Origin: Octopus sinensis
Lineage: Eukaryota
NCBI RefSeq assembly: GCF_006345805.1
Contig: NC_043003.1
Span: forward strand, 2,852,001 to 2,916,000
Direction of reading: 5' to 3'
Length of the DNA stretch: 64,000 bases
Below the pieces are notes generated by a model. It saw only the letters and a program-made list of their open reading frames with translations. It did not search any database and was not told the DNA's origin. A program made the translations under genes and the position numbers. This document shows, in pieces, positions 22,691 through 62,563 of the stretch; the first letter of the stretch is position 1; each line of letters opens with the position of its first letter.

Positions 22691-22730
22691 ATGACAGCTC
22701 CCTTATTTGGGTCACTGTTGTTTTTATACT
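22691..22730 (+). CDS. Putative first coding exon, signal peptide [13 protein letters not shown]
   Basis: ATG is immediately preceded by an in-frame TGA and followed by a hydrophobic core. Donor T|GTAAGC is phase 1 and joins 24130 to give [21 protein letters not shown], with a plausible T-x-G cleavage site. Confidence 0.7.
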
Positions 22731-61700: not shown

Positions 61701-62563
61701 ATTTTTGTGCGTGTGGTATGTTACACTTCACAAATGTTTAATATAATGGTACCTGGAATGAAAAAGAATAATTACATTATAAATATTACACTGCTGAAAA
61801 CATATTAAGACGCTTAGATCAGAAATTTTGAAAATTAAAGGTGTCTGTTTACTTCCTACATGTCTGTGTGTGTATATGCGTTTCCATGGTTGGAATAGTT
61901 TAGTGACTGCCCTGTTAATGTTTTTTATCAAGATTCTTTATCTGTGATTCTTTTCTCCTGATTATATTTTTGTTTCTCTGTCTTTTAAATCACATTTCTC
62001 TACTTTACATCATTTCTTCTCATCACATCCCAAATCACTGCAGTTATTTTTCATGTCACTTATACATGAAACAAGTATTGTGTGCAAGACACTTATTTTT
62101 AGTTGACAAAACCTGAAAACATTTGATATTTGGTGTCAAAATTTTCATCGCATCAACTGCAACCTGGTTCCACCGTTGATTATTTAAACACCAAATAATG
62201 AATATTTAAGCAAAGTTGATAGTCTTTATGTCTTTTTGCTGTGTCTTCCACACAGCAATCATTTTAGTCTCAACCCATTGTCTCAGATCAATTCACTTGC
62301 CTGGGCAACCACATGTCTAAAAATCTTATATGAATGCTCTCTGAGAAAGTTCAAATTCATTTTGTTAGCTAAGTCATTTCTGTATTCCTTTTGATTGCAT
62401 CTTGTATTTTACCAATATCAAAATCATAATCTTTATTAATCTTATTTTACAGATGGTTTATCTGATGACGAAAGAGGAGACTTAAAGGAAGCAAAAGCTA
62501 TGGCCGAAGCTCTTGGGCAGCATCCTAACATTCTCAGTTTTATAACTGATGCTGTAGCTAATG
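22691..62563 (+). CDS. Multi-exon gene, 3'-incomplete: single-pass receptor with signal peptide, 9 EGF-like repeats (MEGF10/Draper/Tie-like), TM helix and degenerate tyrosine-kinase N-lobe (probable pseudokinase)
   Basis: Thirteen exons join in frame with matching intron phases: 22691-22730, 24130-24279, 26108-26245, 29169-29306, 31333-31470, 35932-36072, 39569-39706, 41712-41849, 47311-47451, 48484-48621, 50363-50547, 53530-53698, 62453-62563 (1765 nt). All acceptors are AG; all donors are GT except one GC. N-glycosylation sequons (NGS, NCT, NKT, NCS, NGT) occur only before the TM segment. Confidence 0.88.
24130..24279 (+). CDS. EGF-like exon 1 ([50 protein letters not shown])
   Basis: 8 Cys; donor A|GTAAGT. 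Start is ambiguous between three in-frame CAG acceptors (24130, 24136 or 24139). Confidence 0.88.
25690..25960 (+). pseudogene. Decayed Jockey/CR1-like RT C-terminal fragment
   Basis: [26 protein letters not shown] and RHVA..FFYSHY correspond to the LYKAQIRPxMEYCSHIW..HRRxVASLxLFYRYY pattern. Confidence 0.55.
26108..26245 (+). CDS. EGF-like exon 2 ([45 protein letters not shown])
   Basis: TAG acceptor, G|GTAAC donor, 138 nt, phase 1-1, 8 Cys. Confidence 0.92.
26630..27156 (+). mobile_element. RTE 3'UTR-only copy with five repeat units of about 66 bp
   Basis: Same GGAAGGGCATCCAGCTGTAGAAAC..CATGC(T/C)AGCATGGAAA..(GAT)n tail as 32446. Other copies at about 235-567, 1057-1310, 5131-5500(-), 10138-10328, 25225-25545, 44265-44530(-), 45660-45990, 54062-54440(-) and 56400-56677. 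Confidence 0.82.
27861..28857 (+). repeat. Tandem array of four piggyBac-like MITE units (period about 257 bp), nested in another TTAA MITE (27833-29053)
   Basis: Each unit is TTAA-CCCTTT(C/T)(G/A)TTACC...TAA(C/T)(A/G)AAAGGG-TTAA, separated by the constant spacer AATATATAATAGAGAAACAATT. Confidence 0.88.
29169..29306 (+). CDS. EGF-like exon 3 ([45 protein letters not shown])
   Basis: CAG acceptor, G|GTGAG donor, 138 nt, phase 1-1, 8 Cys. Confidence 0.92.
29546..29740 (+). mobile_element. Family A SINE nested in a TTAA-flanked MITE (29368 to about 29804)
   Basis: 14-bp TSD ATTTCCAAAATTAA at 29532-45 and 29741-54. Confidence 0.85.
30703..31245 (+). mobile_element. Family B tRNA-derived SINE with a nested family A SINE (30821-31054, -)
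   Basis: Head GGCGCAGGAGTGGCTGTGTGG; the nested copy is flanked by GCCGACCATC at 30811-20 and 31052-61. Confidence 0.8.
31333..31470 (+). CDS. EGF-like exon 4 ([45 protein letters not shown])
   Basis: CAG acceptor, G|GTTAGT donor, 138 nt, phase 1-1, 8 Cys. Confidence 0.92.
32446..35617 (-). mobile_element. 5'-truncated RTE-clade LINE: frameshifted RT ORF, 3'UTR minisatellite and (GAT)n tail
   Basis: ORFs 34898-35563, 33964-34719 ([31 protein letters not shown]) and 33387-33854 ([22 protein letters not shown]). The 3'UTR runs through a 12-unit array to the GAT tail. Antisense in the intron between EGF4 and EGF5. Confidence 0.92.
32610..33340 (-). repeat. Minisatellite, 12 units of about 60 bp alternating between two types (about 121-bp dimer), within the RTE 3'UTR
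   Basis: GGTGCTTTTACGTG(C/T)CACC core recurs at about 32616, 32677, 32737 and onward to 33282. Confidence 0.9.
35932..36072 (+). CDS. EGF-like exon 5 ([46 protein letters not shown]), GC donor
   Basis: AAG acceptor after a long pyrimidine tract, 141 nt, 8 Cys. The only frame-preserving donor at the expected position is AAG|GCAAGT. Confidence 0.85.
36203..36921 (+). mobile_element. tRNA-headed SINE-like element with hammerhead-like tail, inverted 5' fragment and a nested SINE
   Basis: Bounded by a 12-bp TSD TTTATGCTAGGT (36191-202 and 36922-33). A/B-box-like head at about 36245-36315, decayed hammerhead at 36817-36854, and inverted tail and head fragments at the left end. Confidence 0.7.
36375..36743 (+). 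mobile_element. tRNA-derived SINE (Arg-like head), nested
   Basis: GGCGCAATGGTCTAATGG A box and GGTTTCGATTCC B box; 14-bp TSD CAACAGCAACAGCA at 36361-74 and 36744-57. Confidence 0.8.
37790..38497 (-). pseudogene. Tx1/L1-clade LINE 3' end (zinc-knuckle region plus 3'UTR)
   Basis: ORF 38134-38448 contains [26 protein letters not shown] and ends in a short A-rich tail next to (TAA)n. Confidence 0.6.
39569..39706 (+). CDS. EGF-like exon 6 ([45 protein letters not shown])
   Basis: CAG acceptor, G|GTAAT donor, 138 nt, phase 1-1, 8 Cys. Confidence 0.92.
40080..40560 (-). pseudogene. Decayed DNA-transposase C-terminus, Chapaev3-like
   Basis: Across frameshifts the minus strand reads [61 protein letters not shown]. 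Family name recalled from this motif. Confidence 0.7.
40719..41449 (-). repeat. Three-unit array of the same MITE and spacer, in the opposite orientation
   Basis: Reverse complement of the 27861 units, including the spacer (GAATTGTTTCTCTATTATATATTT). Confidence 0.88.
41712..41849 (+). CDS. EGF-like exon 7 ([45 protein letters not shown])
   Basis: CAG acceptor, T|GTAAGT donor, 138 nt, phase 1-1, 8 Cys. Confidence 0.92.
42783..42925. repeat. Perfect palindrome, 69-bp arms and 5-nt loop
   Basis: 42783-42851 is the exact reverse complement of 42857-42925; lies between (TA)n tracts. Confidence 0.95.
43105..43437 (-). mobile_element. tRNA-derived SINE with CORE-like TTGAGCAAGGCACTT domain
   Basis: Head GGCGCATGGCTCAGTGGTTAGAGC..GCTCGAATCC on the minus strand. 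Related fragments at about 4950-5125(-) and 27160-27365(+). Confidence 0.75.
47311..47451 (+). CDS. EGF-like exon 8 ([46 protein letters not shown])
   Basis: TAG acceptor, G|GTAAGA donor, 141 nt, phase 1-1, 8 Cys. Read by hand; this frame is not in the ORF track. Confidence 0.92.
48101..48250. repeat. Imperfect 150-bp hairpin
   Basis: Outer arms of 38 bp (1 mismatch), an internal loop, a perfect 25-bp inner stem (GACCTGTTCACTGACAAAATTCCGT/ACGGAATTTTGTCAGTGAACAGGTC) and loop TCTGC. Confidence 0.85.
48484..48621 (+). CDS. EGF-like exon 9 ([45 protein letters not shown])
   Basis: TAG acceptor, C|GTAAGC donor, 138 nt, phase 1-1, 8 Cys. Confidence 0.92.
49315..49614. mobile_element. Fold-back element with 82-bp inverted arms enclosing a hammerhead-like motif
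   Basis: 49315-49396 and 49533-49614 are reverse complements with 2 mismatches. No clear TSD. Confidence 0.8.
49403..49447 (+). ncRNA. Minimal type I hammerhead-like motif, one defect at the base of stem II
   Basis: Stem I TCTGTG/CACAGA (6 bp, perfect); CTGATGA 49409-15; stem II AGG/CCT plus one extra G; GAAA; palindromic stem III ATCATGAT; AUA triplet. Confidence 0.55.
50363..50547 (+). CDS. Transmembrane exon ([62 protein letters not shown])
   Basis: About 26-residue hydrophobic stretch followed by a KKKK stop-transfer signal; CAG acceptor phase 1, AAG|GTAGGT donor phase 0. Confidence 0.9.
50560..51110. repeat. CT-rich tract with about 96-bp higher-order period
   Basis: CACTCTCTTTCCTTCTCTGTCTCTCTCTG recurs at 50678, 50774, 50870 and 50999. 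Confidence 0.9.
51722..51821 (+). ncRNA. Type I hammerhead ribozyme motif with complete catalytic core
   Basis: CTGATGA 51733-39; stem II GTGTAAAG/CTTTATGC with further ATATAAT/ATTATAT pairing; GAAA 51794-97; stem III ACC-AATT-GGT; GUA cleavage triplet (cut after 51807); bulged stem I ATCGGCTAACT/AGATCAGCCATGAT. Confidence 0.72.
51892..52985 (-). mobile_element. Tc1-like DNA transposon, internally deleted and frameshifted
   Basis: About 30-bp TIRs (CACAGACATGGTAGAAGTAAATAGACACCC) with TA TSD; HTH region, FSDESRF and [15 protein letters not shown] motifs. Confidence 0.88.
53530..53698 (+). CDS. Juxtamembrane and kinase subdomains I-II exon ([56 protein letters not shown])
   Basis: Long pyrimidine tract plus CAG, G|GTAAGG donor, phase 0-1. 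[12 protein letters not shown] aligns with the receptor tyrosine kinase motif LGxGxFGxVxxA, and VALLIVK with VAVKxLK. Confidence 0.85.
55975..56310 (-). pseudogene. Decayed RTE ORF C-terminal fragment
   Basis: Minus frame [24 protein letters not shown] matches the RTE C-terminus at 33387-33854. Smaller fragments at about 39190-39340(-) and 47560-47930(+). Confidence 0.6.
56755..57110 (+). mobile_element. RLE-type (Dong/R4-like) LINE fragment flanked by (TAA)n
   Basis: [40 protein letters not shown] 3'UTR-only copy of the 13918 family lies at about 37410-37500(+). Confidence 0.75.
57135..57521 (-). mobile_element. Dimer of two family A SINE variants with different 3' tails
   Basis: Junction at CAGACGAAATACC (about 57292); one tail is CCAAATTTCAGGCCTTGT-type, the other CCCCTTGTGGGTAATAAAG-type. 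Confidence 0.7.
58240..58990. repeat. Compound microsatellite block: GA-rich, (TATC)n and (TG/CA)n
   Basis: Direct reading. Similar simple repeats at 24-235, 13390-13915, 14700-14925, 42590-42715, 42925-43100 and 49900-50190. Confidence 0.9.
59150..59600. repeat. Interrupted (GGT)n microsatellite of about 450 bp
   Basis: Direct reading. Confidence 0.95.
60415..61290 (-). mobile_element. Older truncated RTE copy (ORF C-terminus plus 3'UTR)
   Basis: 60970-61290 is colinear with 33460-33760 (RGRPRKT region) and continues into the GAT-tailed UTR. Confidence 0.75.
61310..61868 (-). mobile_element. Short non-autonomous Tc1 derivative related to the 51892 element
   Basis: TIR CACAGACATGTAGGAAGTAAATAGACAC with one mismatch between ends; [17 protein letters not shown] remnant homologous to ORF 52454-52801. 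Confidence 0.85.
62453..62563 (+). CDS. Kinase subdomains III-IV exon ([37 protein letters not shown])
   Basis: CAG acceptor phase 1; LGQHPNIL matches the RTK alphaC-beta4 motif LGxHxNI. Donor is most likely G|GTTTGT; an alternative GT starts at 62568. Confidence 0.82.

What the first reader, a model, noticed from the sequence alone, without database searches (positions are those of the whole stretch)
22691..62563. EGF-array receptor fused to an apparently dead tyrosine kinase
MEGF10/Draper/CED-1-type ectodomains normally have kinase-less tails, while Tie receptors combine only three EGF repeats with Ig and FN3 domains. Here nine EGF-like repeats alone lead to a TM helix and an RTK-like N-lobe. 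By manual alignment GxGxxG reads NTGCFG, the catalytic VAVK lysine is Leu (VALLIVK), and the alphaC Glu position is Ala ([18 protein letters not shown] against the FGFR-type DLISEMEMMKMIGKHKNI). Three independent losses with an intact frame and splice sites suggest a maintained receptor pseudokinase, analogous to PTK7/ROR/RYK. It may be lineage-specific and could act in recognition or phagocytosis (inference).
Basis: partly seen in the sequence, partly recalled or inferred. Interest (0 to 1): 0.72.

Follow-up and report, generated by a model that had tools for sequence, protein, structure and literature searches.

The report
Kinase-dead Tie-like receptor of cephalopods
The window holds most of an octopus gene for a membrane receptor with nine EGF-like repeats outside the cell and a Tie-type tyrosine-kinase domain inside that has lost every catalytic residue. 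Octopuses, argonauts and cuttlefish have nevertheless kept it almost unchanged, so it is a working "dead-kinase" receptor and not a decaying gene.

Summary
Twelve + strand exons (24130-62563) encode nine 8-cysteine EGF repeats, one per phase-1 exon, then a TM helix and a tyrosine-kinase N-lobe. Their translation is 100% identical to residues 32-606 of Octopus sinensis XP_029638806.2 (811 aa, RefSeq name 'MEGF6').

The full-length protein adds HRD->HGN, DFG->GFG and a 7-residue activation-loop deletion.

Orthologues with the same changes occur in O. vulgaris, O. bimaculoides, Argonauta and cuttlefish. Intron-free cuttlefish-type contigs, read as transcripts, join the EGF array, TM helix and kinase. 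dN/dS is 0.02 for the pseudokinase and 0.06-0.10 for the ectodomain.

Its closest relatives for both halves are uncharacterised molluscan receptors with an EGF-only ectodomain and an active Tie-like kinase. This points to a coleoid-specific, Tie-derived receptor pseudokinase.

Corrections:
- The kinase is Tie-type.
- EGF-only Tie-like receptors already exist in other molluscs.
- Nothing supports a Draper-like phagocytic role.

The likely mode of action, a scaffold or co-receptor using a conserved tail tyrosine, is inference.

The parts
24130..24279 (+). Coding exon 2 (first exon inside the window): the last residues after the signal peptide plus EGF-like repeat 1 (8 Cys). Phase 1-1.
   Evidence: Translation identical to XP_029638806.2 residues 32-82. 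The acceptor is 24130, not 24139.
26108..26245 (+). EGF-like repeat 2 exon, phase 1-1
   Evidence: Matches repeat 2 of the Argonauta and cuttlefish orthologues one-to-one.
29169..29306 (+). EGF-like repeat 3 exon, phase 1-1
31333..31470 (+). EGF-like repeat 4 exon, phase 1-1
35932..36072 (+). EGF-like repeat 5 exon, phase 1-1, with a GC donor (AAG|GCAAGT)
39569..39706 (+). EGF-like repeat 6 exon, phase 1-1
41712..41849 (+). EGF-like repeat 7 exon, phase 1-1
47311..47451 (+). EGF-like repeat 8 exon, phase 1-1
48484..48621 (+). EGF-like repeat 9 exon, phase 1-1
50363..50547 (+). Transmembrane helix ([26 protein letters not shown]), the basic stop-transfer stretch KKKKDK and an acidic juxtamembrane stretch. 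Ends in phase 0 at the donor AAG|GTAGGT.
   Evidence: The join 50547|53530 reproduces ...VIDDKQELIIPQ... of the RefSeq protein.
53530..53698 (+). Pseudokinase exon A, strands beta1-beta3. The degenerate G-loop LNTGCFG is at 53611-53628. VALLIVK is at 53677-53697, with Leu (CTA, 53686-53688) where the catalytic beta3 Lys should be.
62453..62563 (+). Pseudokinase exon B, alphaC helix to beta4. Ala (GCA, 62491-62493) replaces the alphaC Glu; the motif GQHPNI is retained. The gene continues beyond the window: the Argonauta orthologue has six more coding exons.

Best explanation
**Identity (shown).** The window carries exons 2-13 of the Octopus sinensis gene for an 811-aa type I membrane protein. 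Its layout is signal peptide, nine laminin-type (8-Cys) EGF repeats, a TM helix and a Tie-type tyrosine-kinase fold. The fold is a pseudokinase, changed at these positions:
- G-loop first Gly -> Asn
- beta3 Lys -> Leu
- alphaC Glu -> Ala
- HRD -> HGN
- DFG -> GFG
- the activation loop is 7 residues shorter and has lost its Tyr.

**Origin (inferred).** It descends from a molluscan family of EGF-only receptors with active Tie-like kinases. The kinase domain changed drastically on the stem leading to coleoid cephalopods, then froze. It is now under stronger purifying selection than the ectodomain.

**How it most likely works (inferred).**
- The EGF rod binds an extracellular ligand or another receptor.
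- The dead kinase domain transfers no phosphate. It serves as a rigid interaction module, either an allosteric partner or a docking platform for an active kinase, as ErbB3 does for ErbB2 and as PTK7, ROR and RYK do in co-receptor complexes.
- The invariant C-tail tyrosine (EGEMYIAP) sits at the position of the Tie2 tail docking tyrosine, Y1102 by my numbering from memory. A partner kinase probably phosphorylates it in trans to recruit SH2/PTB effectors.

**Confidence by part.** About 0.9 that this is a conserved, catalytically inactive receptor of Tie-like descent. About 0.45 for the specific scaffold or co-receptor mechanism.
For: **Gene model**
- Exons and splice sites.
- 100% identity to XP_029638806.2 residues 32-606.

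**Domains**
- Full-length protein: PK_Tyr_Ser-Thr 173 bits and EGF_laminin; no other domain found.

**Catalytic losses**
- HMMER alignment to Tie2, the best PDB hit at 139 bits (next ROS1 at 118).
- Alignment with three active molluscan relatives, TIE2 and a hemichordate Tie.
- The replacement residues are kept while their codons vary synonymously between species: CTA/CTT, GCA/GCC/GCT, GGT/GGA.

**Maintenance**
- dN/dS of the pseudokinase is 0.022 (218 codons, dS 0.85; O. bimaculoides vs Argonauta).
- The in-window N-lobe has 0 nonsynonymous changes in 67 codons at dS 0.25 (O. sinensis vs O. bimaculoides).
- The ectodomain gives 0.06-0.10.
- The pseudokinase is 91% identical between octopod and cuttlefish.

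**Transcription and splicing**
- Three 3-4 kb Logan contigs carry the whole 800-aa ORF without introns.

**Descent**
- Ectodomain: best BLAST hit is Potamilus P0065, which is a signal peptide, 7 EGF repeats, a TM helix and an active kinase. Identity is 41.5% over 335 aa (224 bits), against at most 177 bits for MEGF or Draper-like proteins.
- Kinase: the domain lies in the Tie-like group (SH-aLRT 94).
- A clade joining it to the molluscan EGF-array kinases is the best tree found (AU p = 0.54).
- The stem branch is 2.25-2.6 substitutions per site; the crown is at most 0.1.
- The tail Tyr is invariant in all 8 aligned sequences.
Against: - No biochemical data exist. 'Dead' is inferred from sequence, and some pseudokinases keep residual or unconventional activity.
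- No partner kinase is identified. I could not establish whether coleoids keep an active Tie-like paralogue.
- No expression data were examined for Octopus itself. The transcript evidence comes from cuttlefish-type sequences.
- The AlphaFold model is of moderate quality only (pLDDT 67.6). It says nothing about the nucleotide pocket.
- The position of the long pseudokinase branch inside the Tie-like group is unresolved. The AU test fails to reject the proposed clade but does not prove it.
- The tail motif YIAP matches no SH2 specificity that I could test.
Confidence: 0.6

Rival explanations
1. The domain is an atypical but still active kinase. On this view it compensates for the missing Lys, Glu and Asp residues with other residues, as WNK and CASK do and as HER3 does at a low level, or by A-to-I RNA recoding, which is widespread in coleoids.
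For: - The fold, the His of HRD, the Asn of the catalytic loop (HGNLCAQN) and the Phe-Gly of DFG are retained.
- A Lys lies three residues after the canonical position (VALLIVK).
- The HRD Asn codon is AAT, which A-to-I editing could recode to Asp.
Against: - Four catalytic residues are lost together: the beta3 Lys, the alphaC Glu, the HRD Asp and the DFG Asp. The first G-loop Gly is lost as well.
- The downstream Lys is Arg in cuttlefish.
- No WNK-type Lys is present in the G-loop.
- Editing cannot turn the Leu (CTA/CTT), Ala (GCN) or Gly (GGT/GGA) codons into Lys, Glu or Asp.
- The activation-loop Tyr is deleted.
Confidence: 0.05
2. The protein is an adhesion, recognition or engulfment receptor of the MEGF10/Draper/CED-1 or SREC kind. 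The EGF array would do the work and the pseudokinase would be only a structural cytoplasmic anchor.
For: - EGF_PEAR1L and Stabilin-EGF profiles give sub-threshold hits.
- Draper-like, MEGF-like and SREC proteins are found with the ectodomain at 32-37% identity.
- RefSeq names the protein MEGF6.
Against: - There is no EMI domain, and no NPxY or YxxL/ITAM tail (sequence).
- The ectodomain is closer to the EGF arrays of molluscan Tie-like kinases than to any Draper or MEGF protein.
- The cytoplasmic domain is the most constrained part of the protein, with dN/dS 0.02 against 0.06-0.10. A passive anchor would not be expected to show that.
Confidence: 0.15
3. The finding is an artefact: a decaying pseudogene, or a gene-prediction chimera that joins an EGF-array gene to an unrelated kinase remnant.
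For: - The introns are long and full of transposons.
- The O. bimaculoides RefSeq model does have a chimeric C-terminus taken from a transposase-like exon.
Against: - All 12 in-window exons are open and have consensus splice sites.
- The same 9-EGF, TM and kinase architecture is found in five species.
- It is also found on intron-free Logan contigs, read as transcripts.
- dN/dS is far below 1 in every part.
- Bivalve relatives have the same architecture with active kinases.
Confidence: 0.02

Closest known systems
Molluscan EGF-only Tie-like receptor tyrosine kinases. These are uncharacterised: Potamilus streckersoni KAK3612663.1, Sinanodonta woodiana KAL3868978.1, Tegillarca granosa KAJ8305566.1 and the Lottia gigantea fragment XP_009044230.1.
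   Same: - The architecture is the same: signal peptide, tandem 8-Cys EGF repeats of 45-47 residues, TM helix and Tie-type kinase.
- The ectodomain is the best match found (41.5% identity).
- The kinases are among the best single-domain hits in 1.84 billion representatives.
- The short Tie-type activation segment, the W-x-A-x-E motif and the tail Tyr are shared.
- A joint clade is not rejected.
   Different: - Those proteins keep GxGxFG, VAVK, the alphaC Glu, HRD and DFG, and are about 49-52% identical to deuterostome Tie kinases. The cephalopod domain is only 32-35% identical to any of them and has lost all these motifs.
- The repeat number is 7 (or 3-4) there and 9 here.
Vertebrate Tie1/Tie2 (angiopoietin receptors)
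   Same: - Tie2 is the closest solved kinase (139 bits, 1.7e-39).
- The EGF repeats resemble the Tie2 EGF module (34% over 106 aa, 1e-9).
- The tail Tyr aligns with the Tyr of the Tie2 tail motif YVNT, a docking site known as Y1102 by my numbering from memory.
- From general knowledge, Tie1 is an orphan that acts through hetero-complexes with Tie2. That is a functional analogy for a co-receptor role.
   Different: - There are no Ig and no FN3 domains.
- There are nine EGF repeats, not three.
- It is catalytically dead, whereas Tie1 and Tie2 keep all motifs.
- Nothing here shows angiopoietin binding, which needs the Ig2 region that this protein lacks.
Known receptor pseudokinases: ErbB3, PTK7/CCK4, ROR1/2, RYK, EphA10/EphB6
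   Same: All have an RTK architecture with a conserved but degraded kinase domain. They signal as scaffolds, allosteric activators or co-receptors, not by catalysis.
   Different: - The parent family differs (Tie-like), as does the ectodomain (EGF-only).
- None of these families is among the 60 best PDB sequence matches.
- The degradation is more complete here: Lys, Glu and both Asp residues are lost together, whereas most of those keep some of them (general knowledge).
- This one is restricted to coleoid cephalopods, as far as the libraries show.
MEGF10/MEGF11/PEAR1/Draper/CED-1 and SREC scavenger receptors
   Same: Single-pass receptors with long arrays of laminin-type EGF repeats. They give weak Pfam EGF_PEAR1L hits and 32-37% ectodomain identity.
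   Different: Those proteins have an N-terminal EMI domain and kinase-less tails with NPxY or ITAM-like motifs. This protein has neither, and it has a kinase fold.
Dreissena polymorpha 'MEGF10 isoform X7' (P0178, 1319 aa)
   Same: A Cys-rich EGF-type array, a TM helix and a kinase-like domain with degraded motifs (HRQ for HRD, DFY for DFG).
   Different: Its kinase-like domain is only 24% identical to the cephalopod one. It keeps the beta3 Lys (CCVK) and sits on a very long separate branch. It is most likely an independent loss.

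Membership tests
Protein tyrosine kinase fold (Pfam PK_Tyr_Ser-Thr) | Significant match to the kinase-domain profile | tested here: met
   The in-window fragment scores 24.4 bits against a cut-off of 23.1. The full-length protein of the same species scores 173 bits over profile positions 4-257. The AF2 model matches RTK kinases at TM 0.66-0.7.
Pseudokinase | Lacks at least one of the beta3 (VAIK) Lys, the HRD Asp and the DFG Asp | tested here: met
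   All three are lacking: Lys->Leu inside the window, plus HRD->HGN and DFG->GFG in XP_029638806.2 and every orthologue. The alphaC Glu->Ala and G-loop G1->Asn changes add to this.
Pseudokinase | No nucleotide binding and no phosphotransfer | not testable with these tools
   This needs purified protein (thermal shift, kinase assay).
Tie receptor family | Kinase domain groups with Tie kinases | tested here: inconclusive
   Tie2 is the best PDB match. The domain lies inside a Tie-like group with SH-aLRT 94. The branch is very long, and the careful tree leaves its position open.
Tie receptor family | Ectodomain with Ig domains and three FN3 domains around three EGF repeats | tested here: not met
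   Pfam finds only EGF-type domains in the 811-aa protein. The sequence runs from the signal peptide straight into EGF1 and from EGF9 into the TM helix.
Tie receptor family | Binds angiopoietins | not testable with these tools
   No binding data. The Ig2 ligand-binding region of Tie2 has no counterpart here.
Molluscan EGF-only Tie-like RTKs (unnamed) | Signal peptide, tandem 8-Cys EGF repeats only, TM helix and Tie-type kinase domain | tested here: met
   Architecture. The ectodomain gives the best hit. The joint clade is not rejected, AU p = 0.54.
Molluscan EGF-only Tie-like RTKs (unnamed) | Intact catalytic motifs (active kinase) | tested here: not met
   The cephalopod protein is a kinase-dead derivative.
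MEGF10/Draper/CED-1 | N-terminal EMI domain | tested here: not met
   No EMI hit in Pfam. Only about 35 residues precede EGF1, and most of them are signal peptide.
MEGF10/Draper/CED-1 | Kinase-less cytoplasmic tail with NPxY and/or YxxL (ITAM-like) motifs | tested here: not met
   The cytoplasmic part is a kinase fold. The sequence contains no NPxY motif.
PTK7, ROR, RYK, ErbB3, EphA10/B6 receptor pseudokinases | Kinase-like domain belongs to that family | tested here: not met
   The best 60 PDB sequence matches are Tie2, ROS1, RET, FGFR, IGF1R/INSR and one EGFR chain. None of the named pseudokinase families appears.

The most novel reading that the evidence does not exclude
Coleoid cephalopods have no active Tie-like kinase at all. 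On this reading their only descendant of the molluscan EGF-array Tie-like receptor became a kinase-dead receptor before octopods and decapodiforms split, so a whole RTK pathway now runs without catalysis. Its extreme conservation would then reflect a new coleoid-specific role, for example in their closed, endothelium-lined circulation or in their nervous system. A weak hint comes from the HMMER search: the 96 best-scoring kinase domains that were put in the tree (from its top 150 hits plus earlier proteins) include no coleoid representative in the active molluscan Tie-like clade. Such a protein could still be hidden inside a 50% cluster.
Probability: 0.15. Interest if true: 0.7.

Novelty: new variant of a known kind. 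Interest (0 to 1): 0.45.

Why it matters
**A new origin for a known kind of protein.** Receptor pseudokinases are a small, well-studied set (ErbB3, PTK7, ROR, RYK, EphA10/B6). They show how kinase folds signal without catalysis. This one has a different origin (Tie-like) and an EGF-only ectodomain. It has lost Lys, Glu and both Asp residues together, yet evolves more slowly than its own ectodomain. It has stayed this way since before octopods and decapodiforms diverged, which by published estimates I recall is a few hundred million years.

**A natural experiment.** It appears to have active sister receptors in bivalves and gastropods, so one can ask what a kinase fold is selected for once catalysis is gone.

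**An annotation problem.** The gene is called 'angiopoietin-1 receptor' or 'MEGF6' in current annotations. Cephalopod transcriptome and single-cell studies that use such labels as angiogenesis or kinase-signalling markers may be misreading it.

Tried and rejected
Rejected. Joined to the next exon it gives a TGA stop, and the real signal-peptide exon is not in the window.
- **My first joins.** 24139 as the acceptor of exon 2 and 50551|53534 as the TM-to-kinase join were replaced by 24130 and 50547|53530 after comparison with the RefSeq protein.
- **Word-indexed homology searches.** They found only the coleoid orthologues plus scattered EGF-array proteins. They did not even return Tie2, so they say nothing about paralogues.
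- **Naming 20 of the HMMER hits.** No cephalopod active Tie-like kinase appeared. This is inconclusive because the library is clustered at 50%.
- **The top-scoring HMMER hits (P0023-P0029).** These are multi-kinase-domain proteins whose scores are sums over 3-10 domains at about 31% identity. They are not close relatives.
- **Foldseek on the AF2 model.** It confirms only a generic RTK kinase fold, with FGFR first, and gives no residue-level information.
- **The cuttlefish 23-aa juxtamembrane insert isoform.** A search of the octopus intron for a counterpart found nothing.
- **Literature searches.** None describes this gene or a Tie-derived pseudokinase. The 'angiopoietin-1 receptor' marker in the Loligo single-cell atlas could not be mapped to this gene.
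- **dS between octopods and cuttlefish.** It is saturated, so ratios are reported only for the within-octopod comparisons.

Full report
**What is in the window**

The window is AT-rich, repeat-laden animal DNA. A scan of all six frames for 8-cysteine EGF-like units finds exactly nine, all on the + strand between 24.1 and 48.6 kb. The only - strand matches are low-complexity Cys/Val translations of a microsatellite near 49.9-50.2 kb.

Each unit is a separate exon of 138-150 nt; the eight internal EGF exons are 138-141 nt. Each exon begins and ends in phase 1, and each has an AG acceptor preceded by a pyrimidine tract. The donors are GT, except for one canonical GC donor (AAG|GCAAGT) after the fifth repeat.

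Three further exons follow:
- 50363-50547 encodes a 26-residue hydrophobic helix followed by KKKKDK.
- 53530-53698 carries the strings NTGCFG and VALLIVK.
- 62453-62563 carries [18 protein letters not shown].

Pfam supports both halves. EGF_laminin scores 7e-11. PK_Tyr_Ser-Thr scores 24.4 bits on the 93-residue fragment alone (cut-off 23.1) and covers profile positions 4-67, which is the N-lobe.

**Identity of the gene and corrections to the model**

A search with the TM-to-N-lobe part returned two proteins: an 812-aa Argonauta hians protein and an 821-aa Acanthosepion pharaonis protein. The 90% cluster of the first also holds Octopus sinensis XP_029638806.2 ('multiple EGF-like domains protein 6'), two O. 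vulgaris isoforms ('angiopoietin-1 receptor-like') and O. bimaculoides XP_014773562.1 ('angiopoietin-1 receptor').

My 12-exon translation (575 aa) is 100% identical to residues 32-606 of the O. sinensis protein. It differs at 2 positions from O. vulgaris and at 30 from O. bimaculoides. The window is therefore O. sinensis or something indistinguishable from it, and the gene is already annotated.

Joined to the next exon it gives TGA. The real signal-peptide exon (MLVFIKSSMLASTASCLVWALMFNFVQTQSS) is not in the window. In O. bimaculoides it lies 21.5 kb upstream of exon 2, and in Argonauta 63.5 kb upstream. The first in-window exon starts at 24130.

**Is the kinase dead?**

Against all PDB sequences, the full cytoplasmic domain matches the Tie2 kinase best (139 bits, E = 1.7e-39). 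ROS1 follows at 118 bits, then RET, FGFR and IGF1R.

That alignment agrees with an 8-sequence alignment that includes three active molluscan relatives, a fish TIE2 and a hemichordate Tie. Tie2 residue numbers below are from memory. The changes are:
- G-loop LGxGxFG -> LNTGCFG, losing the first Gly
- beta3 VAVK/AAIK -> VALL (Tie2 K855 -> Leu)
- alphaC Glu (Tie2 E872) -> Ala
- HRDLAARN -> HGNLCAQN
- DFG -> GFG
- a 7-residue deletion in the activation loop that removes the Tie-type loop tyrosine.

The W-x-A-I-E motif and the short activation segment are normal Tie features, not decay.

The Lys three residues downstream (VALLIVK) is Arg in cuttlefish, so it is not a conserved substitute. There is no WNK-type Lys in the G-loop.

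Coleoids recode many mRNAs by A-to-I editing, so I read the codons:

| Position | Residue | Codons |
|---|---|---|
| beta3 | Leu | CTA/CTT |
| alphaC | Ala | GCA/GCC/GCT |
| DFG | Gly | GGT/GGA |
| HRD | Asn | AAT |

Editing could at most turn HGN into HGD. It cannot restore the Lys, the Glu or the DFG Asp. The synonymous variation at these codons also shows that the replacement residues themselves are conserved.

An AlphaFold2 model is of moderate quality (pLDDT 67.6, pTM 0.73). It has a standard bilobal kinase topology and matches RTK kinases at TM 0.66-0.7. It adds nothing at residue level.

**Is it maintained and expressed?**

Three Logan contigs of 3.1-4.1 kb, from three sequencing runs, carry the complete 800-aa cuttlefish-type ORF with no introns. 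The genomic genes span 68 kb and 93 kb in 18-19 coding exons. Because the contigs lack introns, I read them as spliced mRNA that joins the EGF array, the TM helix and the kinase.

Nei-Gojobori estimates on codon alignments threaded from the genomic loci are as follows:

| Comparison | Region | Codons | dN/dS | dS |
|---|---|---|---|---|
| O. sinensis (window) vs O. bimaculoides | ectodomain | 400 | 0.097 | 0.26 |
| same | TM + juxtamembrane | 81 | 0.083 | 0.26 |
| same | N-lobe | 67 | 0 (no nonsynonymous change) | 0.245 |
| O. bimaculoides vs Argonauta | ectodomain | 398 | 0.063 | 1.54 |
| same | whole pseudokinase | 218 | 0.022 | 0.85 |

The pseudokinase is 91% identical between Argonauta and cuttlefish. 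The whole protein is 75% identical between O. sinensis and cuttlefish. The dead domain is thus the most constrained part of the protein. A pseudogene or a chimeric prediction is excluded as far as these data reach.

**Where it comes from**

An exhaustive HMMER scan of 1.84 billion 50%-cluster representatives with the pseudokinase domain found its own cluster at 654 bits. Every other hit scored 150 bits or less per domain and 39% identity or less. There are no intermediate relatives, so the family as such is confined to coleoid cephalopods in current data.

Among the best single-domain hits are a Lottia fragment (149 bits) and proteins from the bivalves Potamilus, Sinanodonta and Tegillarca (138-144 bits). 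The Potamilus protein (730 aa) has a signal peptide, seven 8-Cys EGF repeats of the same period, a TM helix and a fully intact Tie-like kinase (GHGQFG, VAVK, HRDLAARN, DFGLSK). That kinase is about 49-52% identical to deuterostome Tie kinases.

Independently, the octopus ectodomain is more similar to the Potamilus and Sinanodonta ectodomains than to any MEGF, Draper or SREC protein retrieved with the full-length query. Identity is 41.5% over 335 aa (224 bits) against at most 177 bits for the others. It also hits the EGF module of TIE2 at 1e-9.

In kinase-domain trees, the three coleoid sequences form a 100/100 clade on a stem of 2.25-2.6 substitutions per site, with a crown of at most 0.1. The clade lies inside a group of Tie and Tie-like kinases (SH-aLRT 94), but its exact position is open. 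Constraining it with the molluscan EGF-array kinases gives a slightly better likelihood than the free search (AU p = 0.54).

The kinase half is therefore compatible with the origin that the ectodomain half indicates: a molluscan EGF-only Tie-like receptor. Its kinase was remodelled on the coleoid stem and then frozen.

**How it probably works**

Shown: the architecture, the loss of catalytic residues, strong constraint, and contigs that I read as transcripts.

Inferred: the domain does not bind or use ATP. It acts as an interaction module, and signalling depends on a partner kinase. Two observations point that way:
- The cytoplasmic domain is more constrained than the ligand-facing part. This fits conserved protein-protein surfaces.
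- One C-tail tyrosine (EGEMYIAPTKE) is invariant from vertebrate Tie2 through the molluscan active kinases to the coleoid pseudokinase. It aligns with the Tyr of the Tie2 tail motif YVNT in the HMMER output. From general knowledge, that tyrosine is a multi-substrate docking site (Y1102 by my numbering).

The closest working analogies are ErbB3, which is kinase-impaired, is phosphorylated in trans and activates its partner allosterically, and Tie1, an orphan that modulates Tie2 in hetero-complexes. I could not determine whether an active Tie-like partner exists in coleoids. That is the main open point.

**Rivals**

- Residual or unconventional catalysis is very unlikely, given four simultaneous losses and the codon analysis.
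- A Draper/MEGF10-like engulfment role has no positive support. There is no EMI domain and no NPxY or ITAM tail, and the nearest ectodomains belong to kinases. The EGF array may still mediate adhesion or recognition.
- An artefact or pseudogene is excluded.

**Novelty and literature**

Full-text searches found no description of this gene, of a Tie-derived pseudokinase, or of the molluscan EGF-only Tie-like receptors. One squid single-cell atlas uses an 'angiopoietin-1 receptor' transcript as a marker of an nkx2-5-positive smooth-muscle-like cluster (PMC9839350). I could not map that transcript to this gene.

The gene is annotated but misnamed, and its pseudokinase nature appears undescribed in the library searched. 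I rate it a new variant of a known kind (receptor pseudokinases) and of moderate interest. It is a clean and unusually complete case, with active sister receptors for comparison, but lineage-specific pseudokinases are not surprising in themselves.

Noticed in passing
window 33390-35632 (- strand), in the intron between EGF4 and EGF5: A fragment of a non-LTR retrotransposon. Three adjacent open segments include a reverse-transcriptase domain (RVT_1, 4e-28, at 33967-34740). GC rises to 0.43-0.50 here.
   Followed up: partly
window 16388-16846 (+), 52457-52858 (-), 61367-61591 (-): Tc1/mariner-type transposase DNA-binding (HTH) fragments (HTH_Tnp_Tc3_2 at 1e-12, Sleeping Beauty HTH, HTH_23 at 1e-10). 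Two lie in introns of the receptor gene. A similar HTH sequence was wrongly taken as the last exon of the O. bimaculoides RefSeq model.
   Followed up: partly
L004 (O. bimaculoides) 49255-70166: RefSeq XP_014773562.1 has a chimeric C-terminus: its last exon, 20 kb downstream, encodes a transposase-like peptide. The true last exon (MYIAPTKEPRKRN) is at L004 53972-54013. The penultimate exon was not found, and runs of N lie at 50346-50501 and 53479-53915.
   Followed up: partly
window 26634-26993, 32614-33339, 27861-28862, 40719-41412: Intronic satellites: 66/132-bp and 61/122-bp GC-rich tandem arrays, which give long spurious ORFs on both strands. There are also two arrays of about 257-bp units, both starting TTAACCCTTT, which may belong to one repeat family.
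   Followed up: no
window 36073: A GC-AG intron (AAG|GCAAGT) after the EGF5 exon. All other in-window introns are GT-AG.
   Followed up: yes
P0178, Dreissena polymorpha 'MEGF10 isoform X7': A bivalve receptor with a long Cys-rich EGF-type array, a TM helix and a second, unrelated-looking degenerate kinase (HRQ for HRD, DFY for DFG). It is only 24% identical to the cephalopod pseudokinase. EGF-array receptors may have lost kinase activity more than once in molluscs.
   Followed up: partly
P0011 and P0022 (cuttlefish-type contigs): An isoform with a 23-residue juxtamembrane insert (TDYPHVYPACPVRVTRHSCTGQG) between the TM exon and the first kinase exon. P0011 is seen on 13 contigs. No counterpart was found in the octopus intron 50548-53529.
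   Followed up: partly
P0023-P0029 (hits): Proteins with 3-10 tandem tyrosine-kinase-like domains, several with degraded motifs (HGN, HRN, HQN; NFR or ITGIQG in place of DFG). They are probably merged tandem gene models from an unidentified animal and are not close to the cephalopod gene.
   Followed up: no
window 42.5-43.1 kb, 49.8-51.1 kb, 58.4-59.6 kb: Long microsatellites ((TA)n, (TCTC)n, (ATCT)n, (GTG)n). They account for most of the long low-complexity ORFs, such as the His-, Thr-, Pro- and Ser/Leu-rich ones, in the six-frame list.
   Followed up: no
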